NCBI GenBank assembly: GCA_025594325.1
Contig: JANHCV010000002.1
Span: forward strand, 62,001 to 126,000
Direction: 5' to 3'
DNA from: Blastocladiella emersonii ATCC 22665
Taxonomy: Eukaryota > Fungi > Blastocladiomycota
DNA: 64,000 nt
Shown here in pieces: positions 54 to 46,691 of this stretch. The position numbers and the translations under genes were made by a program. How positions within the stretch are numbered: position 1 is the stretch's first letter; the number at the start of each line of letters is the position of its first letter. The notes beneath the pieces were generated by a model. It saw only the letters and a list, made by a program, of their open reading frames with translations. It was not told the origin of the DNA and did no database searches.

Positions 54-3000
54 ATGGATGACCGCCTCCCGCCCGGCCCCGGCGCACCCGCCGACAACGG
101 CGATGACCTCTTCTTCGAGGAGCCCGACGACGTGCACTCGCGCCGCGCCAGCTCGGTCGCGTCCTCGTCCTCGGCCCACTCGCGCGCGGACAGCCGCGAG
201 GGGAGCTACGACGGCAGCGACGCCGACAGCGACGGGGATGGAGATACCTCGCTCGCCTCGCTTCCGCGCGCCTCGTCGCCGGACAGCGACTACGGCGGCG
301 CGCACAACGCCGACGACGACCTCTTCTTCTTCTACCAGCCACCACCCACGCTTGGCGAACGCTCCGACTCGCCCGCGTCGTCGGCGTCGTGGACCACCGT
401 CTCGTCGCCGTCGTCCTCGTCATCATCGTCCCATACATCACCCTCAATCGCAACCGCGTCGCCCTCGCCACCCGCTTCGCCCTCGGCCGCTGCCACCTTT
501 GCCTCGCCATCGCCACCACCGATCCCGGTTCTCGCGCCACCGTACGCCTAGCCTGCTCGAACGCAGGCTCAGACTTCGCTGATCCACCACATTCTCGATA
601 GATTGAACGTGTCGCCTGCCCCCATCGACGCCGCTGCGCCATTACCGCCACGATCCGCATCCGCACCCGCACAAGTGCAGTTGCCCTCACCGGCACCTGC
701 GCCAGCAGCAACCGCACCAACAGCAGCACTACCAACAGCAGCAACACCAGCACCAGCACTAGCACCACCCGCCCAGGATACGCCCGTGTGCCGCATCTGC
801 CGCGACGAGGCCACCCCCGACATGCCCCTGCACCGCCCCTGCAAGTGCACCGGCTCCATCCAGCACGTCCACCAGGCCTGCCTGCTCGAGTGGCTTTCCC
901 GCTCGGGCAAGGACGCCTGCGAGGTGTGCGGCTGCGCCTTCACCTTCAGCCCCGTCTACCGCGCCGACATGCCGCGCATCGTCCCGCCCACCGTCGTCGT
1001 GCGCGAGATCGTGCGCTCCCTCGTCGTCCACGTCCTCCTCTACTGCCGCGTCCTCCTCGTCCTCGCCATCTGGCTCATCGCCGTGCCCTCGCTCGTCCTC
1101 TTCGTGTGGCGCCTCGCCTTCCGCTTCACCCGCGTCCGCTCGATCGCCGACAGCGCCGCCGCCTTCCCGACCTCGCGCGCCGACCTCGCCGCCTACATCA
1201 ACCTCTCGCCCCACCCGTCCGACTGGCTCCCCACCTGGCTCCCCGAGGACCTCGTCTACGGCCAGGTCCTGTGCGCCACCGCCGTGTCCATCGCCATCCT
1301 CCTCTTCCTCATCAAGGAGTGGGCCCTCGACGCCTTCCAGGTCGCCCTCGAAGCCGAGCGCCGCGCCCTCCGCGAGAAAGCGCGGGCCGACGCCGCCGCC
1401 CTGGGACGCTCCAACGCCGACGTAGCCGCCAAGCAGGCCGCCGTGGTCCGCGCCGAGGCGACCGTGGAGCGCCACGAAATCCGGGTCGCTGCGCTCCGCG
1501 ACTCGGTTGATGCACACGACGCCTCTCTGCTGCGCTCCCGCGGCCTCGTCCAAGACGCCGAGCGCCGCCTCGCCCTCGCCGGCGACGACCAGGGCACGGC
1601 TGACGTTATCAAGGCCGAACTCGATGCCGCTTTGAAGGGCAGTGAGGCAACTCTCCGCGAGGACCTCGCGAATATCAGAGAGCGCGAGCGGGAGCAGTTC
1701 GCTGCCCTCGATGCCCGCGTGGCTGCCCTTAATCTCCCCGATCTCCCACCACCAGAAGCAGCGCCGGAACCCGCCGGCGAGCCTGAGCCAGATGCGGGCC
1801 CGGCCCCCGCCGAGATCGAGGTCGAGTACGAGGACCCGTGGCAGTCTGCCGCTGCCGCCGCGGCCGCCGCACGTCCCGCCGACGTCGACGTCGACCCGCC
1901 CATCAACGTGGACGATCTCCCGCCCGCTGCGCCCGTCGTCGAACCCCCAGCGAACCCCGACAACCGCCCCGCGGCCGACGCCGGCGGCCTCGACGAGCTG
2001 CTCGGCTTCGTCGGCCCGCCCCGTGTCCTGTTCCAGGCTCTCGGCATCACCGTCGCCTCGCTCATCGCCGTCATCGGTGCGACCATCTACTTCCCGTACC
2101 TGGCCGGTCTCGCTGTTCTCGGCACGCGGCCGATCCACTTCGCCATGGTCGTCGCGTCAGCGGCGCTCCGCTCGCTCGACGTCGCCGAGCAGCTTGCCGT
2201 CGACTACCTGCACGCGCGCATCGACTGGTTCCACCCGACCGTCGCCGACGTGGTCCGCCAGCTCCGCGCCGCGCACGCGCACGCGGCCGCCCACCCGGTG
2301 CGGTACCGCGACGTGTACCTGTCGCGGCCCGTGAGCGCGATCCTCGACGAGCTCGACGTGCCCAACGTGCTGACCAACGACGAGTGGCCCATCATCGCGT
2401 TCGTCGTGCTCCTCGGCTGGGCCACGCTCGCCTCGGTCGCGGCCGCGTACTGGTTCGTGACGCGGCGCCGCTCGGTGCTCGCGCGCGTCGGCTTGCGCGT
2501 GATCAAGACCGTCGGGCGCACCATTGCCAAGACGGTCAAGCTCGTCGCGTTCACGCTCATGGAGTGGATGCTGTTCCCAGCGTACACGGGCGTGCTCCTC
2601 AACGCCTTCTCGTTCCCGCTGTTCCCGTACTCGCTCGACCAGCGGCTCGCGTTTGCCGCGCGGCAGCCGTTTGCGGCCTACTTTCTGCACTGGTTCATCG
2701 GCACCCTCAGCATGTTCCACCTCGCCAACCTGGTCGGCGCCGCGCGCGAGGTGCTGCGGCCAGGCGTCATGTGGTTCATCCGCGACCCGTCGGACCCCGA
2801 GTTCTCGCCGTACCGCGAAATCGCGGAAAAGTCGCCGCTCATCATCCTGCGCAAGTTCGCCATCTCGCTCGTCCTGTACGCCATCGTGGTCGGCGGGATC
2901 GTCGGGACCGCGACGGTCGGGCTCGTGGCGCTCGGTGTCACCCCGCTGCGCACACCCAACGTCGCCCTCACGGACGTGCCGCTCGACCTCGTGATCCTCA

Positions 3001-4457
3001 GCGCCGCGCTGCCGTGGATCGCCCGCTGGGTCCCCTGCTACGAGATGGTGCGCAAGGTCATGTGGGGGTGTTTCGTGCAGTTCGGCCGCGCGCTGCGCCT
3101 CTCGAGCTATCTGTTCGGCGGGTACCACGCCGAGGAGGTCTCCTCGGACGGTGGCGCCATCCTCCGCATGCTCCGCCCGCTCGCCCCCGTTCACGTTGCC
3201 CCGACCCACGTCAACACGACCGTCGACCCGCACCCGGTCCTCGCGGCCGCCACGGCAACGACGGGCCAGCTGGATGACGGCGGCAGCGGGCTGTACATGG
3301 TCCCGGGCGTGGACATGATGAAGATCCCGCCGAGCGGGCGCGTCGTGTACCCGGTCGACGCCGCGGGCCGGCTTCTCTCGAGCCCCGCGCACCCGCGGTT
3401 TGTGCCGCTCGCGGGCGACAAGCCCGAGAACTGGACGTTTGCGTGGCTCCCGCCTCGCTTCACGGCGCGGTGGATGGCACTCGTAGCGCTGCTCCTCGGC
3501 ACGCTCGGCGGCACGCTCATGTTCGTGATCGGGCTCCCGCTGATCGTCGGCCGCGAGCTCGTCCCGCACGCGATCCAGTACCTCGCGCTGCCCAACACCC
3601 CCGTCGACGCGATCGCGGCGCGGCTGCACGACAGCTACGCGTACCTGTTCGGCGCGCTCCTCGTCGCCACGCCGGTCCTGCTCCGGCTCGCGCTCGACGC
3701 GCTCGTGTTCGGCCCGCACGCGCGCGTGCGCTCGCGGATCGCGGTCAAGTGGGCCGTCGTCGTCGTCACGGCGGGCATCGTTCTCCCGATCGTGGTCGGC
3801 GGGATCTTCGAGGTCATGGCCGTCCTCCCGACCCGCCTCGCCTTCGAGCCGCTCGCCACGTTCGCCGACCGCGCCGAGCAGGACTCACCGCTGCGCCGGC
3901 TCGCAGTCGATTTCGTGACGGGCGCGGTCGTGGCCCAGATCCACTTTTACCTGATCGACATGCGGCCGGACCCGCCCGAGCCGGTGCGCGCCGTCAACGA
4001 CATGCTGCGGCGCGGGTGGCGCGAGCTTGACATCGACATCTACATCCACCGGCTGCTGTACCCGGGCATGGCACTCGCGCTCGCGTTCCTGTACGTCCCC
4101 GACGCGTTCAGCCGCATCATCACGGCGTGGGTCGTCCCGGGCGCCGTGGCGCGGCTCCTCGCCGCGGACCGCATCGACGACGCGCGCGCGTTTGCCGAGG
4201 CGGTGCCGCCGGCCGCGGTGATGCGCGCGGCCGCCCGCGCCCTCATCGCGTGGACCACGTTCAACCTGTTTATCGGCGCACTCCACTTCCGCCGGTTCCA
4301 GGGATGGGTCCGCCGCGTGCGCGACCGCGAGTACCTCGTCGCCCGAGTCCTGCACGACCGCCCAGCTGACCCGGCCGCGCCACTGGTCGAGGCGCAGGCG
4401 CCGGCACCGATGCCTGACGTTGTCGTCGATCCGGCCGCGATTGTGCCCGCCCAGTAG
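54..4457 (+). CDS. DOA10: ERAD E3 ubiquitin ligase Doa10/SSM4/MARCH6, 2 exons (54-541, 602-4457)
   Basis: RINGv motif CRICRDEATPDMPLHRPCKCTGSIQHVHQACLLEWL...CEVC, many TM helices and the conserved RDPSDPEFSPYREI segment. Intron 542-601 (GTACGC..CTGAT..TAG) joins the 54 ORF in frame to the 603 ORF. Confidence 0.93.
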
Positions 4458-33792: not shown

Positions 33793-34117
33793 TTTTTTGC
33801 CTGTTTGTTGGTGTAATATATCTGCTCGCCATAGCTGTTCGCCCACTATCCACCATAGCCTTACTGCCAATATCGCGAGTCCGCACTGTCTCATCCCCTT
33901 ATTCCGTCGAGTTTAAGGGCCCGTTTGGTTCCGGGGTGAATCAGGTGGATCAATCGATTTTACACGGTCCGGTGTTCACCCAGCTGAAACGTGGCATTTT
34001 CACCCCGTCGCGTTCATCGCGGCGTTTGGTTCAACCCCCGGGTGAGCTGAATGGAACCCTCGTCGCTGAATCGCCCGTCTGCTCGCCCCCGAAACCTTCA
34101 GGCTGTGCTCCCCGGCC

Positions 34118-34125
34118 TATATAAA
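34118..34125 (+). promoter_or_regulatory. TATA box of Harbinger ORF1
   Basis: TATATAAA about 60 nt upstream of the ATG at 34187. Confidence 0.6.
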
Positions 34126-34186
34126 CGCCGTTTTCCTCCAAAGTAACTCGCTCTCTCTCCCCCGTCCTCCCTCAAAGCCGAAAAGA

Positions 34187-35315
34187 ATGGCTCCCCCGTC
34201 AAGCAAAAAGCGCGCTGGCCGTACGGCCATGTCCATCGAGGAGATCGTCAAGAACGTGCCCGAAATCCGCCGCCGCCCGCCGATAGCGACGAGGATGCAG
34301 ATGACGACGCTGCTGGGAGCGACGGCAACGCTGCTGTCACGCCGACCAACCCGCTGCCGCCCGTGACCATCGCCAAGCCAAGCAAGCGCAAGGCCAGTGG
34401 CAGCAAGGCCAGCAGCGGCAAGGCCAGCGGCGGCAAGGCCACCTTCTGCTCCGCGTCGACCAACTTCCTCCTCGACCACTTCTGCAACCTCGCTGACGAC
34501 GGCGTGCTCGGCGACAGCAACACGCTCAAGGCCCAGCACCGTGTGTCGATTGCCCAGGCCCTGTCGGACGAGTTCAACATGCAGTTTACGGCGGAGCAGG
34601 TCAAGAACCGCGTGACATACGTACGCTTTGTCTTGCGGACACGCGTCAACCGTAGCGCTAACAACGTCAGCGTTCGGCTCCAGCTTCGCACTTGTTTTCG
34701 CGCCGTAAAACGGCTTCTGTCGTACTCGGGCAACGGCTGCACCTGGAATGAGGGTGAGTGCACGGTCGACGTGCCAGAGGAGTTCTGGAACGATCTCTCG
34801 GTACGTTTGTTCAATATCGTTACGCGTCAACTCGCGGCGAGCTAACAGCGCCTGGCCTGCTTCAATTGTAGGCAGAGCTCAAGGAGGAGCTGACTGCGGG
34901 CTGCAAGCCCTTCCCGTACTACAAGAAGGCCAACATGCTGTGGGGCAGCTCGACCGCCACCGGCGAGTACTCGCACCTCAAGCAGGACGGCAAGGAGTCT
35001 GGTGACGTGGAAGGTGTCGATGGTCAAGACGACGCGGCCCCCGCCAGCAAGCGCAGCCGCACTTCGGACAGCAGCTCGCGTCGCCTCTCGGACTCGGAAT
35101 TCCTCATGGGCATCAAGGAGGTGTTCCAGAGCGTCGCGACCGCCGACTCCAAGCCCGCTCTGACCGCCGCACTTGAATGGGTCCAGGACGCGTACAACGA
35201 CAATGAAGAGTACCAGATCGACGTCGCCACCCGCCTGACCGAGGATCAAGCGCTTCGCGTCATGGCCGTGTCCGAATCGAAGCGCAAGCGCGTCCTCGAT
35301 TTTTTCATTCAGTAG
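34187..35315 (+). CDS. Harbinger ORF1, Myb/SANT-like DNA-binding protein (introns 34621-34683, 34801-34871); apparent 1-nt frameshift near 34263
   Basis: QFTAEQVKNRVTY|LRTCFRAVKRLLSYSGNGCTWNE...EEFW and KPFPYYKKANMLWGSSTATGEY match the PIF ORF1 pattern. The ATG at 34187 is out of frame by one base with the downstream coding region. Confidence 0.8.
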
Positions 35316-35628
35316 CTCTCTCGCACATGTCCCCCTCCCCTCGCGTTGCTTCCTGGCCTTGTTCTCGCCCATTTGTGTCCAATACATCTGGCTTTGTGTC
35401 CATCGTATCTTCAATCGTTACCCTTCGCTCGAAAATGACGCGACTCGTTGAGAAACGCGTGGTTCTCAAAGTGTCTCGCACGTCACGTGATTGATCGACG
35501 CGTCTCCACCGATGCGTTCTGACCTCAGCGACGCGTCAAATCATCTGAAGTCGCTTATCTAACGTTATAGTACTTGACAAATCAGTATATTACAGCATGC
35601 ATGCGGGTACAACAATTATTTCGCGCCT

Positions 35629-36946
35629 TCAAAGACGGGTCCCACGAGCGGCCATGACGCGCCTGTACTCGGTCCAAAGAACATTTGCGACGCGGTTCCG
35701 AAGCGAGATACCGCGCTGACGAGCTCCGTCCAGCGAGGCCTCGAGGACAGCGGCCTCGTCGTCCTCCTCGTTCTCGTCGTCCAGGGGCTCGCGCCCACGC
35801 ACTGGCGCCTCACGCGCCGCGTCCCGCGCGCGCCGGAGCTCCGTCTCGGCGTCGCGAAAGAAGGCGTCGCCGCCTTGGTTCCACTTGTTGATCATGTTGT
35901 GCAGCGTGCAGAGCGCGTACACAAGCTTGACTTGAGTCTTGATTGGGTAGGCCGCGCCAATCGAGAGGACGCGGAACCGCTTCTTGAGCACGCCAAAGAT
36001 ACGCTCAACAGAGTTGCGGAGCGACGCGTGACGCAGATTGAAAAGCTCCTCGCGGTTCTTAACTCTACGTACGTTGATGAAGCGGATGAGATGGCGCCAA
36101 CGTGATGGTCATGGCAGTGAGAACGTACCCATCCTTGCCGCGGGCAAACTCGCGAAGATGATAGCGGGTACCGCGGAAGGGCACGATGATGGACGTGCGG
36201 TTTGCGTAGCCGCCGTCGGCGAGGTAGAAGCGGCCGGCGGGGATCTTGAACCCACGGGCGAAGGCGTCCAAGAGCACGCGCGAGTCATGCGCCTTGCCCT
36301 CCCACCCTGCAAGAACGTAGGTGAAATTCAAGTCAAAGTCGCAGGCAGCGAGGACATTTGAGGATATGGTCCCCTTGCGGTTTCGGAACGAGTCGTGAAG
36401 CTTAGTGGGCACAACAAACGGGATGTGCGTTCCGTCAAGCGCGCCGACCGCGTTCTGGAACGGAGCGTATTTCGGGTCGTGGGCGATGCGCTCATGCACG
36501 GGCGTAGAATCGGACGGCTGGACAATGAACTCGGGCATCAGGCGGTACAGAGCGTCGAGCACTTGCTTCAGAACCCTGGACGCGGTCTCGCCAGAGATTT
36601 GGAACCGCTCCCTGAGGTTGCGGTTGGTGCTGCCCTCGCCGGCCATGACAAGAAAAACCATGAAGCGCGCCTCGACGGACAGCTCGCGGCCGTCGGCGAG
36701 AAGGCCACGGTCGCGGAACAGGCGGCAGATGGCCTTGAAGGTCTTGCGGGGCATACGGGCGATTTCCGAAAAACGCGTTTCGCTGTTGCACGTCAGCAGC
36801 TCTTGAACCCACGACTCGCCGGAAAGCGTGGACGTGCGGATAGGCTCCCACGAGCGGCGCTCGTTGCGAGCAGCGAGACGTCGCAGGAGAGCGAGGGCGG
36901 CTGTGAGCATTAGGCCGCGCAGCTTGCGGTTGTATCCCTTGCCCAT
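35629..36946 (-). CDS. PIF/Harbinger DDE transposase (HARBI1/DDE_Tnp_4 family), 2 exons (intron 36065-36128)
   Basis: RMPRKTFKAIC, LRERFQISGETASR, AVGALDGTHI (D), AGWEGKAHDSRV (D), FYLADGGY, YHLREF, LFNLRHASLRNSVERIFGVLKKRF (E). The frame is intact. Confidence 0.95.
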
Positions 36947-37606
36947 GTTGTTTGAGGGCTCGAGAACACGATGCGTGAGGTTAGGTGTTGATTCGTTGCA
37001 ATAAGCGCGGCTGCAAAGAGGTGGGAAAGATTTTATTGCGGGGGGGGGTGGGCGTTCATCCAGCGGGGCGTTTGGTTCGCACGGCCGCTGAGATGAACGG
37101 GGGTGAGGTGAAACGTGGCAACTTTTTCAGCTGATCCACCCGATCTGAACCAAACGGGCCCTAAGTCGGTGACATGCGTCCTACTTGGGCATTGTTCGGT
37201 CGTACCGCGCGACTGGGAGCGGAGACATCCGCGCGAGTCCGTGTTGCTGCCATTGTCCGATTTGACGATGCCAGCGTTTCCCGGGTTACGTTAGAACAGT
37301 GTCAAAGCTTGGGCTACCCTCTGAGAACTAATCTCCCGTTTCATGGGCTCGTCGTACAGTGTTTCTCGCACGACTGGAGTTGCGTGATTCGAGGTCTGAT
37401 CGACGCGTTGCGCCACACGCGGCAACACGTCCGCCATGCTCGCTTTCCCAAAACGTCGTTGAACATGGCACGATTGTCACTGCGTTGCCAGACGGGAACA
37501 TCCATAGTGTGTTCAGACGCCGTCACCTTCGCGCTTGCCGCGCACACGGTGCATCAGGCGAACTCACTTCCTCGTCAGTCGCCGCTCCCCTGTCTCAAGC
37601 AAAAAA

Positions 37607-37968
37607 ATGTCCAGTACCAACCAGACCGCCAGTCAAGCAGTGGACTTTTCGCCCCTCGACAACTTCCTTCGAGCTCCCGCGTCAGACGTGTTCAAGGACG
37701 AGAACAAGCGGCGGGGCTCATTCGGCTCATCGCGCTGCGCGTCCAGTCGCTTCGCCAGCGCCTTCTCCTGCACTATGCGGGTTTCCTACACAATGCCGAG
37801 AAGCCCAAGTACTCCGTGGACGACGCTGAGAATTTTCGTCGGTACCTGGCCAGGCCCATCGAGCATCACGTCGACCTCGCCCGCATGCTCATGGACCCGC
37901 CGATCAAGGATGCCGAAGCGGAGCTGCTCGAGCTCGTCAACAAGCGCCGCGAGAAGGCCTGGTACTGA
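37607..37968 (+). pseudogene. Paralog B of the orphan at 33415; one-base frameshift in the G-run at 37713-37716
   Basis: MSSTNQTASQAVDFSPLDNFL..KRRG is in one frame and LIRLIALRVQSLRQRLLLHYAG..DPPIKDAEAELL in another. One extra G restores gap-free alignment to paralog A. A sequencing error is also possible. Confidence 0.65.
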
Positions 37969-38026
37969 TCTGTTTGGTTGATCATGAGCATAATATATGT
38001 ACACACTTGTTCTTCGTTCGTCACGA

Positions 38027-39895
38027 TCACCGCCGTCCATCACGTCCGCCGTAGCCCTGTTGCTGCTGGCGCTGCCGATGTCGCGGATCCACGTCTTCCT
38101 CGTCCTCCTCGTCCGTCAGGTACATGGTACGCGCCATGTCGCGCTTGGGCATGACCTGGTCGTACCGCGCGGCTCGCGCCGGGGACGCGGGCATCTGCGG
38201 GCCCGCGACGCCGCCGTTGCTCGCCGATCCGAGCCGGCCACGACCCGCGGCCAGCGACGGCACACTGTTTGGGTTGAGGTTGCGCAGGGAGAACCCGGAC
38301 CGCAACGTGTCGCTCGCGTACCCACCGACCGGTCCGCCGCTCTGCGACGGCAGCGATCCGCGCGGGTACGTCGACGGGTCGTACGGGTCGACCGACTCGG
38401 CGTACAGCTGGCCGCTCATGAACGTGGCGCGCGGCGTCTGCATGGGCGACGTGAACCGCGACCCGCCGTTGCCCGAGCCCGACGAGTGCGTCGGCGTTGA
38501 CCGGCTGTGCTGGTTGTACGGGTCGTAGTCGCTCGAAGACGCCGGGGAGAGCGGCGCGAGTCGCTGCGACGCGGGCTGCGAAGGAGGTGGTGGTGGTGCG
38601 CCGCCGCGGTAGGCGGCCGACGCGGGCGCGAGCCGAGGTGACGCGTTGACGAACCGCGAGGACGACGGAGGGCCGGGCGCGGGTTGCTGCGGGCGGCCAA
38701 AGGCGGGGCTGCCGTACCCGTACGCGGCCGGGTTGGCGAGCCCGGGTCCACCGTTGCCGGATGCCATGTAGCTCGCGCCGCCCGGGACGCCCGACGGGGT
38801 GCCGAACGACGGGACCGTCTCGCGGTCGAACCGCAAAGCTGGCGGAGCAAAGTCGACAAAGTCGTCCTGCTTGCCAGTGGCGGCGCCCTCGGGCTTCGAG
38901 TCGGCGACGGCGATCAGCTGCACGCCGCCGCCGTACGCGTCGCTGGGGCCAAAGTCGGCCTTGGTCGGCGCGATGCCCATGGCCGGCGCCGCCGGCTGCG
39001 TGGCGCGCGTCGAGTCGCTCGGCTCGAAGCCGACGCGGTCGAGCGGCTTGGGCAGCGCGACGAGCGCGGCGAGCGCGAGCAGGCCCATGGCGCCCTGCGA
39101 GATGGCGAGGAGCTTGAGCAGGAGGAGCGGGTTCGCGGGGCCCGTGGGCGTCGCGGACATGGTGCCGAGCTGCTGCTGTTTCTGTTTCTGTTGCTGCTGC
39201 TGCGGCCGGTTTGGAGCGGCGCCGTTGGTGGTGGCTGTGCGGTTCTGGCGCGCGGCAGCACCCGCGGTGGCAGTCGGTGGTGATGATGGGGAAGTTGATG
39301 AGGATGGCGCGAGGTCGGCGGCGGCCAAGAGCGACTGAGCGATAATCGGCGGGGCCGCAGACAGGCGCGGCGACGAGACGCGCGAGGTGCCCGTCGGTAG
39401 CACAGCGCCGCGCGTGGCCGTGGCGGTCGTGGAACCGACACGGTTGCCGGCCGACGGGGTCGGCGTCGAGGAGGTCGGGACCATGCCGGAGCCGACAGCG
39501 GCGCCCGCGGCCTCGAGCTGCTGCTTGGGGAATGCAGACTCGCCAAAGAGCTGCAGCGGCTTGTCGGCGAGCGGGCCCGGGACGGGGACCAGGTTGAAGA
39601 AGGCGAGGGTGAGGTACACGGACGCGGCCGCGTACACGAGCAGGAGGAGGATGAGGAACCGGATCAGCCCGGTGACGACGGGGCTCGCGCGGTACGACGT
39701 GTAGATGCGCGAGGCGAGCGAGCACTGTCGCCGACGCACAAAGGTCAGGACGAGCGCGAGCACACCGAGAACAGCGCCGGCGCCCGCGAGGAACATGGCG
39801 CGGGTCGCCTTGTCCTCGAAGAGGAAAAAGCCGAATGCGCCCGCCGAGCCGGCTAGCACGAGGTGCACCAGCGCGGCGCCAATGTACGGCGCCAT
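38027..39895 (-). CDS. Uncharacterised membrane protein (N-terminal TM helices, Pro/Ser/Gly-rich tail)
   Basis: Hydrophobic segments at the N-terminus and mid-protein; host codon bias; likely start MAPYIG. Confidence 0.65.
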   Translation of the reverse strand: MAPYIGAALVHLVLAGSAGAFGFFLFEDKATRAMFLAGAGAVLGVLALVLTFVRRRQCSLASRIYTSYRASPVVTGLIRFLILLLLVYAAASVYLTLAFFNLVPVPGPLADKPLQLFGESAFPKQQLEAAGAAVGSGMVPTSSTPTPSAGNRVGSTTATATRGAVLPTGTSRVSSPRLSAAPPIIAQSLLAAADLAPSSSTSPSSPPTATAGAAARQNRTATTNGAAPNRPQQQQQKQKQQQLGTMSATPTGPANPLLLLKLLAISQGAMGLLALAALVALPKPLDRVGFEPSDSTRATQPAAPAMGIAPTKADFGPSDAYGGGVQLIAVADSKPEGAATGKQDDFVDFAPPALRFDRETVPSFGTPSGVPGGASYMASGNGGPGLANPAAYGYGSPAFGRPQQPAPGPPSSSRFVNASPRLAPASAAYRGGAPPPPPSQPASQRLAPLSPASSSDYDPYNQHSRSTPTHSSGSGNGGSRFTSPMQTPRATFMSGQLYAESVDPYDPSTYPRGSLPSQSGGPVGGYASDTLRSGFSLRNLNPNSVPSLAAGRGRLGSASNGGVAGPQMPASPARAARYDQVMPKRDMARTMYLTDEEDEEDVDPRHRQRQQQQGYGGRDGRR

Positions 39896-41244
39896 GGCGG
39901 CGACGGCGGGGGCAGGAAGGGGCGGTGGCGGGTCGGCGCGAGCGGGAGCGCGAGGGTGGTGGCGCCGGCCCGCGGCGGATGATGGTGAGGCGGTCGGCCG
40001 AGTTGGACGAGTGCGAGGGGAGGTGGGGCCGATCCAGCGGTTGGAGGCATCCGACCCAGCGGCGCCACAGACGGAGGAGACGAGAAGGCGGCGAGGACGG
40101 CGATGGAGGAGCGGGCGAGGTCGCCGTCGTCGAGGCCGTCGCAGTCGTTGTGGACGGTCCAGCGTCACTTGCACAAGGAAGCGTTGAGCAGGGATTAGCG
40201 AGGCTTAGCCTCAGGAGAGAGAGCGAGCTTGCGGCTGGAGGGCGGGCGGCAAGCAGGGGGAATCACAAGCCGAGAGATGAGCTCGATGTCCAAGTCGGGA
40301 ACAGCGAACACCGCGGCGGACAGCGGTCGTCGGCTAGAACCCTCGGGAGAAGCGAAGTCGCGAGCACGCGAGAGGGGACGCCAGCACCGGCGACATGATT
40401 GGGCGAGGCGGTGCACGGCGGTAAGTGCAGGACGGCGGCGGGCGGGAGTGCGGCGGTCGCGGGCGCGCGTGCATGCACGGTTCCTGCAAGCCTCAGCCAC
40501 TCACGTGTCGGGCTTGCATTGATGAAGTCGCCACAGGGCCGCGCGCACCGCGTCGCCGGCGACCAGCTGCTCCTCTTCTCTCGTGAGTCGAACGGCCTTC
40601 TTTCGGTCTCCCGAGGTCAGGGACCCGATGCATCGTTTCTCATCGTGTAACGCGAAAGACGCACGTTGCACTGTGACGCGTCCGACTTGAGGCGCCGGCT
40701 CGACGGCTCCGAGCACCAGCTGCGCGCTCGTGCATGCGTCATGATGCCGGCTCAGCAGCAAGAACGCTCTCAAGCGGATCAGCGCGCTGTTATTGCTCAT
40801 TTGAACGCGATGAGATCAACCGGCGTGCTCCAGGCGACGCTCGCTGCCGCGGCCGTCGCTGCGGGCGCAGGATGCGCAGCGGTCGCCGCCTTGGCCACCG
40901 CCGTCGCGACCGACTGACAGCGTGTCAGCTTCTCTGCGGCGTGACGAGGGAGTATCCGCCGCGTGTCTGCTTTCGAGCCTCGAAGTCGCGCTGAATGCGC
41001 GACGTTCTTCCCGAGGCATGAGGTTCGCGTCGCTCGCGCCCATGGCAGGTCCTTGCGCCGTGCAGGCAAGCTGGCGACTGTCTTCACCGTACAACTGAGC
41101 AAGGAGGTGCTTCTCTCGCAGTGTCCGTAACCGGGCGGGACGAGCAGAGTCGAATACCAAGCAGTTGTTATAGACGGGCGGTGGGGAACAGAGAGAGATA
41201 AACGAGGAAACGGGTCGGGAACTAGGGTACAGATCAGAGCGACC

Positions 41245-41913
41245 TTACACGGTCACCTCCTTGGCCTTGGGCGCTGGCGCAGCAGCAGCAGCGGCGGCGA
41301 GGGCAGCGGCGGCAGCCTCGGCCTCCTCCTTGCGCTCCTTGTCCTGGCGCGCGCGCGTGACGATCTCGAACGCTGCGGGCAACCGGAGGCCGGCCTGGCG
41401 GAGAGCGTCCTTGGCCACCTCCCAGTGCAGGGCGCCGCCGCCAATCTCGAACACGATGCGGCCCATGGGCACGCGGCACGCGTAGAACTCGAGGGTACCC
41501 TTACCCTTACCCATACGCGTCTCGTTACCCTTGGACGTGACGGGGATGTCGGGGAACACGCGCAGCCACATCTCGCACCCCTTGACGGGACGGATCTTGC
41601 GGCGGATGACGCGGCGCGCCGCCTCGAGCTGCGCCGCCGAGATACGCGCGCCCTCGCGCATAGCGAGACCGTACTCGCCGTGCTGCAGCGTGGTACCGGC
41701 CTTGGACCCGCCGATCGGCAGCGGGATGCGGCCCTTGTGCGCCTTGCGGAACCGGACCTTGCGCGGGTTCACAATCTCACCAGCAAAGCGGCGCTGGTGC
41801 GCGGAAGCGGCCTGCGGGGCCACCACGAGCGACGAGGGGACGGCAGCCGGGGCAGAGGCGGCAGCGGTCGAGGTGAGGCCCAGGCGGCCAAAGGCGCGGG
41901 TGAGCGAGAACAT
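41245..41913 (-). CDS. MRPL16: Mitochondrial ribosomal protein uL16m
   Basis: Arg/Ser/Ala-rich presequence, PRKVRFRKAHKGR, GEYGL, RISAAQLEAARR, RVFPDIPVTSKGNETRMGKGKG, GRIVFEI. Confidence 0.95.
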   Translation of the reverse strand: MFSLTRAFGRLGLTSTAAASAPAAVPSSLVVAPQAASAHQRRFAGEIVNPRKVRFRKAHKGRIPLPIGGSKAGTTLQHGEYGLAMREGARISAAQLEAARRVIRRKIRPVKGCEMWLRVFPDIPVTSKGNETRMGKGKGTLEFYACRVPMGRIVFEIGGGALHWEVAKDALRQAGLRLPAAFEIVTRARQDKERKEEAEAAAAALAAAAAAAPAPKAKEVTV

Positions 41914-43470
41914 GGCGGCGGGGAGCGGTGGTGGCGACGGTTGTTGGTAGGCGTTGGAGGATCGGGGCGATGCGCGTGTCGCCGTTGATTACGTTGCGTC
42001 GAGTTAAGCGTTCATCAAGGGTGTGCTCCGTCGTCAAATGCTAGCCAAGGGCGCTCGCGTCCGGCGAGCGTTCAGGTGCCACAACACAATCGAGTTCAAA
42101 AAGCGCCTCCCAACCGGTCACCCTGGCCCACGTGGTGCGAATCAACAGCTGGCTCGCTCCCCGCTCGCGCCTTCCCTGCGCCCCAAAAGCGAGGTAAACG
42201 GTGTCTGCCGGCCTGAATGCACCGACCATGCAGCAACAGCGCCATGCAGCTCCACCGCTTCCGTCACACACCCTCCATCCCCCAACTTGTACGTCTCCCC
42301 CGGACCCCGACCAGCCAGCCTGCCGCCCCCACATGTCGCCTTCAGGGAAGAAAAAACATGCCGCCCCAGGCGGAAAGAGAAACAATGTCGATATCGCATC
42401 ATTTTCCGATTCTGAGAAGACGAACACGGTGGCTCGCGGCGCTGCAACGACATCGCTCTCGAACCAGTTGCTAACTGTTCTCTCGCTTGCCTCCATAGCC
42501 TGCTCGCACACCTACCTCCCCTCTCGTTTCCCTCGACACGGTCCCAGTGCGGACCGATCCTGCTCCGTCGCCACCGTCGACCCCCCGTTTCTCTCACATC
42601 GAGAAGCGGGTCCTCAGATCTGCTATTCATCCCCGCCGTCCGCTCGCTCGCCCTTCTCGAGGATGAAGATCACCTTCTTTCTCACCATAGCTTATCACTT
42701 TCCCGTGCTGGTTGTATTCACACTGGCCGACTCGAGGAGCGCTCAGCGCGCGTCCACACTTGTTTTGCTACTTTCTTGACCGACCATGATATGGCGATGA
42801 GGAGAACAACCAAAATATTTCATGCTAAGTCCGAACATGGCTGAGGACACCTTTCTCTCTGAGCCGCTCGCTGCTTCGCAGCACACGTTGCTACTCTATG
42901 TGCGTTTTGCTTCGCTTCTCGCGCGACAGGGCTTCGGTCTCGCACGGCTATTGAACGAGACCGAGTGGCAAGCAACGTGATGACCGATGCTTCGACACGT
43001 ATCCTCAACACACCTTCTCGCGTTAAATGCACCGCTTCGAGCGGCATCGCTAGCTTTCAACGCTGTGAGCGCGGTACCGACCGCCAACGCTACTTAGGTT
43101 TCCCATCACCTCGGGGATCACCTCCCCAACTTAGTGTTGGTACCACCTCAAACTGACCTGTACATGGTGCGCGCGCTAGTTAAGATCATAGATGATGGCT
43201 GCACCGCTCAAAACGAGCGTTGGCTGACGGGGTGGGGTGGAGTTGAGCTATCGCGCGGCTGACGCATTTTCCGCTCCACAACCACGGATCCTTGGTTTAA
43301 AAACAAGTTTTGCTCACGAAAGTAGTGGATTAGGTTCGTAAGCGGGCGTCAAGCTTGTTAGCAAACAAATTGGCTTGGTGAGGGTGACGCGAACCAGCGT
43401 TCAAGGTCCGCGTGCGATGCGACCTCGGAAGTCTCGTTAAACATCCCCCACACCTCGGGGACGCCAAAAG

Positions 43471-43552
43471 TACTAGGGATGGGGTTCGAACCCATGCCTC
43501 CGAAGAGATTGGAACTTGAGACCAACGCCTTAGACCGCTCGGCCACCCTAGC
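43471..43552 (-). tRNA. tRNA-Leu(CAA): tRNA-Leu(CAA), intronless, 82 nt, with G1:U72 and U31.U39 deviations
   Basis: GCTAGGG acceptor stem, A-box TGGCCGAGCGGTCTAAGG, anticodon loop CT-CAA-GT, long variable arm, B-box GGTTCGAACCC, discriminator A, downstream TTTT terminator. Confidence 0.88.
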
Positions 43553-43622
43553 GATATTTTTGTGAGTTTGCGCAGATGAGGTTCCTGTTCACCTAAAACA
43601 GCGCCCCACCCTCCTCCTCCCC

Positions 43623-44624
43623 GAGGATCACGAGGTCGAGGGGCACGTCCGTGAGGGCGACGTTGGGCGTGCGCAGCGGGGTCACGCCGAGCGCGACGAG
43701 CCCGACCGTCGCGGTCCCGACGATCCCGCCGACCACGATGGCGTACAGGACGAGCGAGATGGCGAACTTGCGCAGGATGATGAGCGGCGACTTTTCCGCG
43801 ATTTCGCGGTACGGCGAGAACTCGGGGTCCGACGGGTCGCGGATGAACCACATGACGCCTGGCCGCAGCACCTCGCGCGCGGCGCCGACCAGGTTGGCGA
43901 GGTGGAACATGCTGAGGGTGCCGATGAACCAGTGCAGAAAGTAGGCCGCAAACGGCTGCCGCGCGGCAAACGCGAGCCGCTGGTCGAGCGAGTACGGGAA
44001 CAGCGGGAACGAGAAGGCGTTGAGGAGCACGCCCGTGTACGCTGGGAACAGCATCCACTCCATGAGCGTGAACGCGACGAGCTTGACCGTCTTGGCAATG
44101 GTGCGCCCGACGGTCTTGATCACGCGCAAGCCGACGCGCGCGAGCACCGAGCGGCGCCGCGTCACGAACCAGTACGCGGCCGCGACCGAGGCGAGCGTGG
44201 CCCAGCCGAGGAGCACGACGAACGCGATGATGGGCCACTCGTCGTTGGTCAGCACGTTGGGCACGTCGAGCTCGTCGAGGATCGCGCTCACGGGCCGCGA
44301 CAGGTACACGTCGCGGTACCGCACCGGGTGGGCGGCCGCGTGCGCGTGCGCGGCGCGGAGCTGGCGGACCACGTCGGCGACGGTCGGGTGGAACCAGTCG
44401 ATGCGCGCGTGCAGGTAGTCGACGGCAAGCTGCTCGGCGACGTCGAGCGAGCGGAGCGCCGCTGACGCGACGACCATGGCGAAGTGGATCGGCCGCGTGC
44501 CGAGAACAGCGAGACCGGCCAGGTACGGGAAGTAGATGGTCGCACCGATGACGGCGATGAGCGAGGCGACGGTGATGCCGAGAGCCTGGAACAGGACACG
44601 GGGCGGGCCGACGAAGCCGAGCAG
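43623..44624 (-). repeat. 1,002-bp inverted duplicate of Doa10 coding positions 1998-2999 (gene fragment)
   Basis: Base-by-base comparison shows identity to 1998 up to about 2926, then five substitutions, all synonymous. Homology stops sharply on both sides. Confidence 0.98.
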
Positions 44625-45050
44625 GAAGACATCCAACTGGTCGCCCGCCCCACAACTCCAACTTCACTCATTGTGCACCTGCTTGTAACTTCTCAGATTT
44701 CTTCAAACGGCGAGCCGAGATACTCTTTTCAACCGTGTTCGGCGAGCTGAGATGCGTTGTGCAACCGTGCTCGGCAACGGGGCTCGAGATGTCTTACGCG
44801 ATCACCTGATTGATCATGATTGATCAACGCGTCTCAAGTTTTGCTCTGTCGCGCGACAAGGCCCCTCACGCCTCGGAGATGTCCCTACCCCCTCCCCACC
44901 TTAAACATTAAATATTGGCCTGCGTGTAACAGTTTATTTTGCCGAAGGAGATCCGTTCCCATTGCTTGCGATCGATTGGCCTATGGCCTGAAGTACCTGC
45001 ACTGCGCTCCCGAGATCGGGCTAGATAGTTAAGCAGATTCGATGTCAGGC

Positions 45051-45257
45051 GACGTGGGCCGACGTGGGCCGACGTCGAAATTGCGGTCAACGACCTCGCG
45101 CGACGTCGCACGATCTCAATCTTTGTCATGTCCGCTGTAACGACGTCAGCCTAAACTGCCCAGATCGTCATCTCCCGGTTTCCTGATGCAGCGCAAAACG
45201 CTCGTGAGGCACCCTCGCTCAGTGGTCATCTCACCTCCTATCTCACCTCCTATCTCA
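45051..45257. repeat. Short tandem repeats inside the island: (GACGTGGGCC)x2+ at 45051 and (ATCTCACCTCCT)x2+ at about 45228
   Basis: Read directly; (TGATTGATCA)x2 also occurs near 44807. Confidence 0.8.
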
Positions 45258-45520
45258 AAAGAAATGAGCGGCACGTCCGTCAACCAGAAATTGCCTGATC
45301 GCCACTTTGATCGGCTCCGGTCTGACCTCACATTGAAAACGAGTAGAGTCGCGTAAAGCTGCTAGCGCGCGTCCAGCTTGTCGGCTTTCTTCAAAGCGTT
45401 TGATCCCGTTCGTTGACCTCAACCATGTTCGACCTCATGTTCAGTTCTTTGCGACAAGATGTCATGATGTGTGCGAAGAACAGTTTACTAGTGAATGAAG
45501 ACGACGCGAGCGAGGCGGTA

Positions 45521-46691
45521 CTAGTCGACCTTGGCCATGAAGACGCGGTCCTGGCTGTAGACCTCGATGCCCTTTTCCACGTCGCGCAGCTTGGCGAGGA
45601 CCTCCTGCTGGCGGCGGTACTTCTGAACGTTGCTAGGTTGGAGGGTGATGGGGAAGCGTGAGAGCTCGAGCATGAGTTCCTTTTGGGCTACATCAAGTCG
45701 GAGCGTGTCAGTGGCGACAATGGGTGCGAGCGAAGAGGAACGCGAGGTACGCACACTGCTGCAGGTAGTGGAGCGTCGAGAGTCGCTCCTCCTCGGGAAC
45801 GGGCACGGTGCCTTCTGGCCAGGTGCTACACGACATCGCAACGGGTGAGTGAGGGGAATCGGCGACGCGATCCGCAAGTGAGCAACACGTACTCGCGCTC
45901 ATGTTGACGCTGACGCTTCTCCTCCTCGACGCGGGCCCACTCCTCCTTGCGCTGGATGAGGCTACACGGGATGAAGGTCAGCGAGCTGGTTCCGAACCGG
46001 AATTGAGTCGAGAAGCGTACTAGGCGGGGACTTGGCCAGGCTTGGTCTTGCGCTCGGTTCCAGGCGAGCCGGACCCGCTCAGCGACGAGGACGAGGCGGA
46101 GCGCGCGAGCGAGCGTGGTGGCTGCTGCTGTTGCGAGGGTTGTGGGCGGGAGGACGAAGACGAGGTAGTGGGAGGAGGGCGACGCGACGACGGCGGGGTG
46201 GGTCCGCGGCGCGTTGACTCGGCCGAGTTGCGCGGCGAGCTGGATGTCGACGAGGGGCCCTCGGGCGTCGGGGGCAGCGGCGAGTTGCTGCTCAGGTACA
46301 GGCGGCTCGGAACGTGGCTGTAGCGGTCGCTCGAGGGCACGCGTTTCTTTTGCGCGGCGTTGTGCTGGTCCTAGACGCGGAATAAGTCAGTGTGTGACGT
46401 CGGCGCAGCGCAGTGTGAAAGTGTAGCGTACCCGCTCCTTCTTCTGGCGAACCTTCTCCTGCAGGACTTTGAGCTGGCGCGCGTTGTCCTTGGCGTGGTT
46501 TTTGGGGACGCCGCCGCGCTTGGTGATCTCATCGCTTGATGAGGGGAGCGGGCGAGCGACACGTCAGCGACGAGTCACGATGCGCGGAACGGAGAGCGGC
46601 AATACCGGATGCCGCGGGTCGGGTTGAGCGCCTCGTGGATGGCCGAGGACGAGCTGTGCTTGCGACCGATGGCGGCGGCGGACTGGAGCAT
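45521..46691 (-). CDS. ENKD1: Enkurin-domain protein (ENKD1-like), 6 exons
   Basis: Spliced product: KNHAKDNARQLKVLQEK, YSHVPSRL, GQVPAYLIQRKEEW, PEGTVPVPEEERLSTLHYL, ELSRFPITL..KLRDVEKGIEVYSQDRVFM. Introns 46535-46605 (AAG acceptor), 46371-46431, 45962-46020, 45826-45892 and 45688-45754. Confidence 0.82.

What the first reader, a model, noticed from the sequence alone, without database searches (positions are those of the whole stretch)
43623..44624. 1,002-bp internal slice of Doa10 re-inserted, inverted, about 40 kb away with its reading frame intact
Seen: 43623-44624 is the reverse complement of 1998-2999, with sharp ends and no flanking homology. It keeps 334 in-frame codons covering the membrane core, including the conserved RDPSDPEFSP segment, but lacks the RING and an in-frame ATG. 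Inference: this is a very recent gene-fragment capture (Pack-TE-like, break-repair or retro-capture). A near-perfect copy in a new context could produce dsRNA/siRNA against Doa10, or a RING-less dominant-negative fragment if it is exonised.
Basis: partly seen in the sequence, partly recalled or inferred. Interest (0 to 1): 0.8.

Follow-up and report, generated by a model that had tools for sequence, protein, structure and literature searches.

The report
Stray inverted Doa10 gene fragment
The water fungus Blastocladiella emersonii really carries a backwards 1-kb copy of the middle of its Doa10 ubiquitin-ligase gene, pasted 40 kb away just upstream of a tRNA gene; it looks like a scar of DNA-break repair rather than a transposon capture or a working gene, and is an ordinary kind of event.

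Summary
Window 43623-44624 is the reverse complement of 1998-2999: 1,002 nt, 5 mismatches, sharp ends.

**Not an artefact.** The window is Blastocladiella emersonii ATCC 22665 (GCA_025594325.1, a PacBio HiFi assembly). Contigs built independently from three public runs of that sample cross both junctions. In one run the shared 929 bp sits at twice the depth of its flanks.

**Not a transposon capture.** The flanks lie on single-copy contigs of 6.6 kb and 20 kb. There are no significant terminal inverted repeats, no target-site duplication, and no likeness to the nearby Harbinger element's ends.

**Best reading (0.6).** A one-off copy-and-paste during break repair, 70 bp upstream of tRNA-Leu(CAA), with the donor gene left intact.

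**Unexplained.** All five differences are synonymous third-position changes packed into 55 nt at one edge. Neutral decay should not do this. It suggests a recombination mosaic involving another functional Doa10 sequence.

**Function.** The public annotation calls the copy a 334-aa hypothetical protein, H9P43_001976. This is probably an ab initio artefact. I found no other stand-alone protein of this kind and had no RNA data.

The scan has noted similar identical-core, diverged-edge repeats elsewhere in this genome. Interest is low.

The parts
54..4457 (+). Resident Doa10/MARCHF6-type E3 ligase gene. The public model is 1,447 aa with one 60-nt intron over the stop at 549-551. The gene is intact.
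   Evidence: Pfam RINGv and MARCHF6_C on ORF 603-4457. Public gene-4457 with the same two domains. Match to yeast Doa10 structures 8pd0/8pda/8tqm.
1998..2999 (+). Donor-type slice: codons 466-799 of ORF 603-4457. It holds the conserved TD-domain core.
43623..44624 (-). The ectopic inverted copy: 1,002 nt, 334 in-frame codons, protein-identical to the resident slice.
   Evidence: Both junctions are crossed by read-derived contigs, and the shared 929 bp has double depth.
43641..43695 (-). Diverged edge: five differences from the resident gene, all synonymous third-codon-position changes.
   Evidence: Statistics: P(5/5 synonymous) = 2.7e-3; P(all within 55 nt) = 4.5e-5. In the contigs, the copy's variants are linked to the left flank and the resident variants to downstream Doa10.
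43553..43622 (.). 70-bp spacer between the copy and the 5' end of the tRNA gene. The left junction is at 43622/43623.
   Evidence: Contigs span 42800-43725 with no differences in X1 and X3 (records 1 and 12); X2's contig (record 5) differs only at 42908.
43470..43552 (-). tRNA-Leu(CAA) gene. The copy lies upstream of it on the same strand.
   Evidence: ARAGORN. Rfam tRNA model, 52.3 bits.
43593..44817 (-). Public gene model H9P43_001976 (334 aa). It has a 12-nt first exon and a 220-nt intron whose acceptor lies inside the Doa10-derived DNA, then the copy plus 9 flank codons and a stop.
   Evidence: Gene call in L001 7097-8321. Sequence read. Protein P0001, 100% identical to the copy.
44625..45520 (.). 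Right flank: single-copy intergenic DNA up to the 3' end of the enkurin-domain gene (45521-46691, minus strand).
   Evidence: X2 contig of 20,129 bp starting at 44595, depth 136. Gene calls.

Best explanation
A one-off, transposon-independent copy-and-paste. I infer that a chromosome break in the intergenic DNA about 70 bp upstream of the Pol III-transcribed tRNA-Leu(CAA) gene was repaired with about 1 kb of DNA copied from the Doa10 gene 40.6 kb away on the same chromosome. The route would be either a templated insertion joined by end joining or an aborted synthesis-dependent repair. The donor gene was left intact.

The insert is most likely a non-functional gene fragment that the public annotation mistakes for a gene. 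Its present pattern (929 nt identical plus a 55-nt patch of synonymous differences) is a recombination or gene-conversion mosaic between Doa10 sequences, so its age is not known.

Shown: the duplication is real, has exact boundaries, sits in single-copy flanks, lacks transposon hallmarks, and left the donor intact. Inferred: the break, the repair route, the timing and the lack of function.
For: - **Junctions real.** Contigs built independently from each of three runs of the strain cross 43622/43623 carrying the copy-specific variants. They also cross, or abut by k-1 bases, 44624/44625. In X2 the shared 929-bp contig has depth 268.5 against 135.1 and 136.4 for the flanks and 127.6 for the resident flank. 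No contig shows an empty site.
- **Two library types.** X1's depth fits my own estimate for the 65-nt Illumina library and X2's high depth and long contigs suit the HiFi library described in PMC9730499. This assignment is my inference.
- **Flanks are unique.** X2's contigs, by my arithmetic from their lengths, run 37124-43725 and 44595-64723, and the left one ends at the Harbinger end.
- **No transposon hallmarks.** There are no extended TIRs (the best are 18 nt, E = 0.37 each). The flanks do not resemble the Harbinger TIRs. No TSD abuts the copy, and a shared 8-mer nearby is expected in 6-11% of random sites.
- **Donor intact.** The resident gene keeps both of its neighbouring parts.
- **Junction signature.** At most 2 nt of possible microhomology, read directly.
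- **Precedent.** Such insertions are described in yeast: about 10 bp to over 1 kb, copy-paste, Ku-dependent (PMC12214859).
Against: - No empty site from another strain is available, so the break, any filler DNA and the microhomology cannot be verified.
- A fresh templated insertion does not by itself predict five clustered synonymous-only differences.
- Both ends fall on codon borders (chance 1/9), which together with the synonymous pattern hints at coding constraint.
- The link to the tRNA gene rests on a single case.
- All three runs come from one sample, which is probably the source of the assembly.
Confidence: 0.6

Rival explanations
1. Remnant of an older, larger inverted duplication of a functional Doa10 gene, of the gene-bearing palindrome type this scan has noted elsewhere in the genome. 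Deletions trimmed it to 1 kb, and recent gene conversion from the resident gene overwrote its core, leaving one old, diverged edge.
For: Edge differences confined to synonymous third positions are what two once-functional paralogues would show. Earlier unchecked scan notes report identical cores with roughly 10% diverged, third-position-only edges in other inverted repeats of this genome.
Against: There is no trace of Doa10 homology beyond either end at DNA or protein level. Both ends are sharp. The copy sits in 53%-GC intergenic DNA beside a tRNA gene. A dead remnant should also carry non-synonymous changes in its unconverted edge (P about 0.02).
Confidence: 0.15
2. RNA-mediated capture: a partial cDNA of Doa10 mRNA, possibly from another allele, made by a retroelement's reverse transcriptase and inserted at the break or near the tRNA gene.
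For: The copy is wholly exonic and in mRNA sense on the tRNA's strand. Unchecked scan notes report tRNA-targeting retroelements in this genome. A transcript from another allele could explain synonymous-only differences.
Against: There is no poly(A), no TSD and no 3' end of the mRNA. The slice is internal, and the donor stretch has no intron that could prove an RNA route.
Confidence: 0.08
3. A working gene or exon: H9P43_001976 encodes a RING-less Doa10 membrane-core protein kept under coding constraint, for example as a modulator or dominant-negative partner of Doa10.
For: A 347-codon ORF with the frame intact, ends on codon borders, and 5 of 5 differences synonymous. A public gene model exists. 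The fragment contains the conserved TD domain.
Against: There is no start codon at the 5' end. The model needs a 12-nt exon and an acceptor inside Doa10-derived DNA. An intact frame is trivial in a copy that is 99.5% identical. No other protein of 184-585 aa resembles it among 5.8 billion sequences. There is no expression evidence.
Confidence: 0.07
4. Transposon-mediated capture: a Pack-type DNA element or Helitron carried the fragment.
For: A young-looking PIF/Harbinger element lies 6.5 kb away (note; ends read). Two 18-nt imperfect inverted repeats bracket the island. A crude block shuffle found more such pairs than expected (4 versus 0.14).
Against: Those inverted repeats have BLAST E = 0.37 each, do not extend, have no TSD and do not resemble the Harbinger TIRs. 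The flanks are single copy over 6.6 kb and 20 kb. No TSD abuts the copy.
Confidence: 0.05
5. Assembly or polishing artefact.
For: Both repeats lie in one contig of an assembly from which duplicated contigs were removed by hand.
Against: Junction-crossing contigs in three runs, double depth of the shared part, and each variant set linked to its own flank. HiFi reads of about 10.5 kb far exceed the 1-kb repeat.
Confidence: 0.02

Closest known systems
Templated insertions, i.e. captured genomic fragments at chromosomal double-strand breaks (yeast Break-Ins studies; PMC12214859, PMC11724301, and Yu et al. 2018 as cited there)
   Same: Copy-paste with the donor left intact. Size is at the upper end of the reported range (about 10 bp to over 1 kb). 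Ends are sharp with at most 1-2 nt of microhomology. Either orientation occurs, and there is no TSD or TIR.
   Different: Seen here as a fixed natural variant, not an induced event, and the break is inferred. In yeast, tRNA-proximal regions are reported as preferred donors; here the tRNA gene is at the acceptor site. The synonymous-only edge patch is not part of that picture.
Inverted repeats or palindromes homogenised by gene conversion
   Same: Inverted orientation on one chromosome, with an identical core and a diverged edge.
   Different: Only a 1-kb internal gene fragment is involved, with a 40.6-kb spacer. There are no symmetrical arms, and one partner is not a gene.
Pack-MULE or Pack-type transposon gene-fragment capture
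   Same: A gene fragment relocated into new non-coding surroundings and picked up as a gene model.
   Different: No TIRs, no TSD, single-copy flanks, and no related element carrying other cargo.
Inverted duplications at inversion breakpoints (staggered-break model)
   Same: Two inverted copies of about 1 kb, tens of kb apart.
   Different: In that model each copy keeps one ancestral neighbour. Here the resident copy keeps both (the gene is intact) and the ectopic copy keeps none.

Membership tests
Doa10/MARCHF6 E3 ligase (the resident gene) | N-terminal RING-CH (RINGv) domain | tested here: met
   Pfam RINGv, E = 3.8e-15, residues 63-109. PDB Doa10 RING matches.
Doa10/MARCHF6 E3 ligase (the resident gene) | Conserved TD membrane core and MARCHF6-like C-terminal domain | tested here: met
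   Residues 637-763 align to yeast Doa10 616-746. MARCHF6_C, E = 6.7e-16.
Doa10/MARCHF6 E3 ligase (the ectopic copy as a member) | RING-CH domain and C-terminal domain present | tested here: not met
   The copy has no Pfam hit at all. It covers ORF codons 466-799 only.
Pack-type or TIR DNA transposon | Terminal inverted repeats at the element ends | tested here: not met
   The best bracketing inverted repeats are 18 nt (16/18), E = 0.37, with no extension and unlike the Harbinger TIRs.
Pack-type or TIR DNA transposon | Target-site duplication abutting the ends | tested here: not met
   No direct repeat abuts the copy. An 8-mer lying 14 and 22 nt away has p of about 0.06-0.11.
Pack-type or TIR DNA transposon | Ends repeated elsewhere in the genome (a family) | tested here: not met
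   The flanks lie on unbranched single-copy contigs of 6.6 kb and 20 kb. Only exact 31-mer sharing is excluded; diverged copies are not.
Processed retrocopy | Poly(A) tail, TSD, loss of introns | tested here: inconclusive
   No poly(A) or TSD. The donor stretch has no intron, so intron loss cannot be scored.
Templated insertion at a DSB | Donor retained, sharp junctions with 0-few nt of microhomology, no transposon hallmarks | tested here: met
Templated insertion at a DSB | Demonstrated pre-insertion (empty) site and end-joining dependence | not testable with these tools
   The look-ups returned only this one assembly, and no empty-site contig appears in its runs.
siRNA or hairpin-RNA source locus | Antisense or convergent transcription and small RNAs mapping to the copy | not testable with these tools

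The most novel reading that the evidence does not exclude
H9P43_001976 is a real, newly born gene: a RING-less Doa10 membrane-core (TD-domain) protein kept under coding constraint and periodically overwritten by its parent gene. A related possibility is that the 1-kb inverted pair lets the 40.6-kb interval flip, reversibly truncating Doa10 after codon 799 of ORF 603-4457. The synonymous-only differences, the codon-border ends and the intact frame do not exclude this.
Probability: 0.06. Interest if true: 0.55.

Novelty: new member of a known kind. Interest (0 to 1): 0.22.

Why it matters
- **Annotation.** GenBank's hypothetical protein H9P43_001976 is a 1-kb fragment of the Doa10 gene. It should be flagged as a probable pseudogene fragment unless expression is shown.
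- **Genome biology.** It adds a clean, junction-verified natural example of a kilobase-scale copy-paste insertion in an early-diverging fungus. It also fits a genome that, by this scan's earlier unchecked notes, is rich in inverted repeats with identical cores and diverged edges.
- **Open point.** The synonymous-only edge patch hints that a second functional Doa10 haplotype once existed, for example in a diploid phase. If confirmed, this would bear on ploidy and loss of heterozygosity in this supposedly asexual laboratory strain.

Tried and rejected
- **Synthetic plant or assembly chimera.** Rejected by read-derived contigs.
They have no TSD and no extension, and the left and right flanks share no further similarity. 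My block shuffle suggested an excess of such pairs (4 versus 0.14), but it does not preserve dinucleotides or low complexity, so I give it little weight.
- **Harbinger relation.** The TIRs are unlike the flanks. A 19/21-nt likeness between 44815-44835 and the Harbinger interior is unexplained but short.
- **8-bp TSD CGCCCCAC.** Not significant.
- **Second Doa10 scrap at 45266-45280.** An exact 15-mer only, with no extension.
- **Staggered-break inversion model.** Rejected on topology: the resident copy keeps both ancestral neighbours.
- **Paralogue search for a donor of the edge patch.** No near relatives were found; the best hits are 26-43% identical, from other fungi. However, the organism's own 1,447-aa Doa10 also failed to appear, so this blank is weak.
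- **Other strains or empty site.** Exact-protein look-ups of two neighbouring genes returned only the one public assembly.
- **Other RNA families in the island.** Only the tRNA was found.

Full report
**1. Observation**

The window holds one long repeat: arms 1998-2999 and 43623-44624, inverted, 1,002 nt. Aligned with 100-nt flanks, the two are identical for 929 nt. They then differ at five positions (resident 2927, 2936, 2939, 2954, 2981; copy 43695, 43686, 43683, 43668, 43641) and agree for the last 18 nt. Similarity stops dead at both ends. Low-stringency blastn, and tblastn of the whole Doa10 protein against the rest of the window, find nothing further apart from chance-level scraps.

The resident arm lies in ORF 603-4457, which has a RING-CH domain and a MARCHF6-type C-terminal domain. 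It also aligns with yeast Doa10 structures, including the TD-domain core, which falls inside the slice. The slice is codons 466-799 exactly, starting and ending on codon borders, and both versions encode the same 334 residues. The copy's ORF (43593-44636, minus strand) has no ATG at its 5' end, but it has five internal in-frame ATGs.

**2. Source and reality**

An exact look-up of the neighbouring mitochondrial uL16 protein places the window on contig JANHCV010000002.1 of GCA_025594325.1. That accession belongs to Blastocladiella emersonii ATCC 22665. The genome was assembled from PacBio HiFi reads (mean 10.5 kb) and polished with 65-nt Illumina reads (PMC9730499).

Three public runs of one sample hold the stretch. 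Their independently built contigs show the following:
- In all three runs, a contig runs from the left flank across 43622/43623 to 43725 and carries the copy-specific variants.
- A contig covers 43696-45400 in X1, and one starts at 44595 and runs right for 20 kb in X2.
- In X2, the shared 929 bp is a separate contig at depth 268.5. Depths are 135.1 (left flank), 136.4 (right flank) and 127.6 (resident upstream flank).
- The resident variants sit on their own contig, continuous with downstream Doa10.
- There is no joint or contig for an empty site.

X1's depth fits my estimate for the Illumina library, and X2's depth and long contigs suit the HiFi library. On that inference, two library types agree.

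The runs are probably the assembly's own data. This rules out an assembler error or a planted sequence, but it says nothing about other strains.

**3. Setting**

The copy lies in 53-58% GC intergenic DNA, between the uL16m gene (41245-41913, minus strand) and an enkurin-domain gene (45521-46691, minus strand). Its gene-sense 3' end is 70 bp upstream of the 5' end of a tRNA-Leu(CAA) gene (43470-43552, minus strand).

The public annotation calls a 334-aa gene here, H9P43_001976. Reading the DNA shows a 12-nt first exon and a 220-nt intron whose acceptor is inside the Doa10-derived sequence, followed by the copy plus nine flank codons. This looks like an ab initio construction.

**4. Not a transposon capture**

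- **Unique flanks.** By my arithmetic from contig lengths, the X2 contigs beside the copy are unbranched and single copy from about 37124 to 43725 and from 44595 for 20 kb. The left one ends at the right end of the multi-copy Harbinger element. The immediate flanks are therefore unique at 31-mer resolution.
- **No real TIRs.** The inverted repeats proposed as element ends (42832-42849 with 45414-45431, and 42915-42932 with 44843-44860) are 16/18 matches with E = 0.37. They have no extension and no TSD, and they do not resemble the Harbinger TIRs.
- **No TSD.** No direct repeat abuts the copy. A nearby shared 8-mer is expected in 6-11% of random sites.
- **Not a clear retrocopy.** There is no poly(A). 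The donor stretch has no intron (the gene's only intron is near 549-551), so an RNA route can be neither shown nor excluded.
- **Not an inversion breakpoint duplication.** That model fails because the resident copy keeps both ancestral neighbours.

**5. Mechanism I commit to**

A break in the DNA just upstream of the Pol III gene was repaired with about 1 kb copied from Doa10, 40.6 kb away. The junctions carry at most 2 nt of possible microhomology (read).

This matches templated insertions described in yeast. Those are copied fragments of about 10 bp to over 1 kb, pasted at breaks by Ku-dependent end joining, with the donor retained (PMC12214859; also PMC11724301). The break, the route and the role of the tRNA gene are inferences from a single case.

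**6. The edge patch**

All five differences are synonymous third-position changes within 55 nt. The probabilities are:

| Test | Probability |
|---|---|
| Five random changes in that stretch all synonymous | 2.7e-3 |
| Five random sites falling within 55 nt of 1,002 | 4.5e-5 |
| Observed pattern with a neutral copy and a constrained gene diverging for equal time | about 0.02 |

Two of the differences are CpG in the copy against TpG/CpA in the resident gene. That is the direction expected for deamination on the resident side.

So the pattern is a mosaic, and the differences look like those between two functional Doa10 sequences. Possible sources are another allele in a diploid phase, a lost paralogue, or coding constraint on the copy. 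Blastocladiomycota alternate between haploid and diploid generations (PMC9457484).

I could not test these options. The paralogue search gave only distant fungal homologues, and it also missed the organism's own Doa10. Earlier unchecked notes of this scan describe the same identical-core, diverged-edge pattern in other inverted repeats of this genome. That makes ectopic conversion a plausible contributor here.

**7. Function**

Nothing shows function.
- No protein of 184-585 aa other than the model itself resembles the fragment among 5.8 billion sequences.
- No RNA run was available.
- Read-through from the enkurin gene would produce sense RNA, not antisense.
- A 1-kb inverted pair could in principle mediate inversion of the 40.6-kb interval and truncate Doa10. 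Contigs cannot test this.

**8. Verdict**

This is a real but ordinary structural variant: a new, well-verified member of a known kind (gene-fragment copy-paste at a repair site), mis-annotated as a gene. The one real oddity is the synonymous-only edge.

Noticed in passing
window 42908: Run X2 (the high-depth run, probably HiFi) has C at full depth where X1, X3 and the assembly have T. This is either a subline difference or a heterozygous site collapsed differently.
   Followed up: no
window 45266-45280 (minus strand): An exact 15-mer equal to resident Doa10 2970-2984. It carries the resident variant, not the copy's, and lies 640 bp from the copy. There is no extension and E is 0.05-0.16, so it is probably chance.
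   Followed up: yes
window 44815-44835 and 35488-35506: A motif TGATTGATCRACGCGTCTC is shared between the copy's right flank and the interior of the PIF/Harbinger element. The flank version matches a roughly 3x-depth contig exactly in all three runs. It could be a regulatory motif or a transposon scrap.
   Followed up: partly
window 54-4457: The resident Doa10 ORF has no ATG before its RING domain. The public model (1,447 aa) starts at 54 and removes a 60-nt intron over the in-frame stop at 549-551. This protein did not come up in the word-based homology search, although it lies within the length window.
   Followed up: partly
window 37124 (right end of the Harbinger element at 33914-37164): By my arithmetic, the single-copy X2 contig on the left begins here. 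This is consistent with the Harbinger element being multi-copy in the genome.
   Followed up: no
window 41914-43469: About 1.5 kb between the uL16m start and the tRNA gene has no called gene, no Rfam hit and only short noisy ORFs. Its content is unknown.
   Followed up: partly
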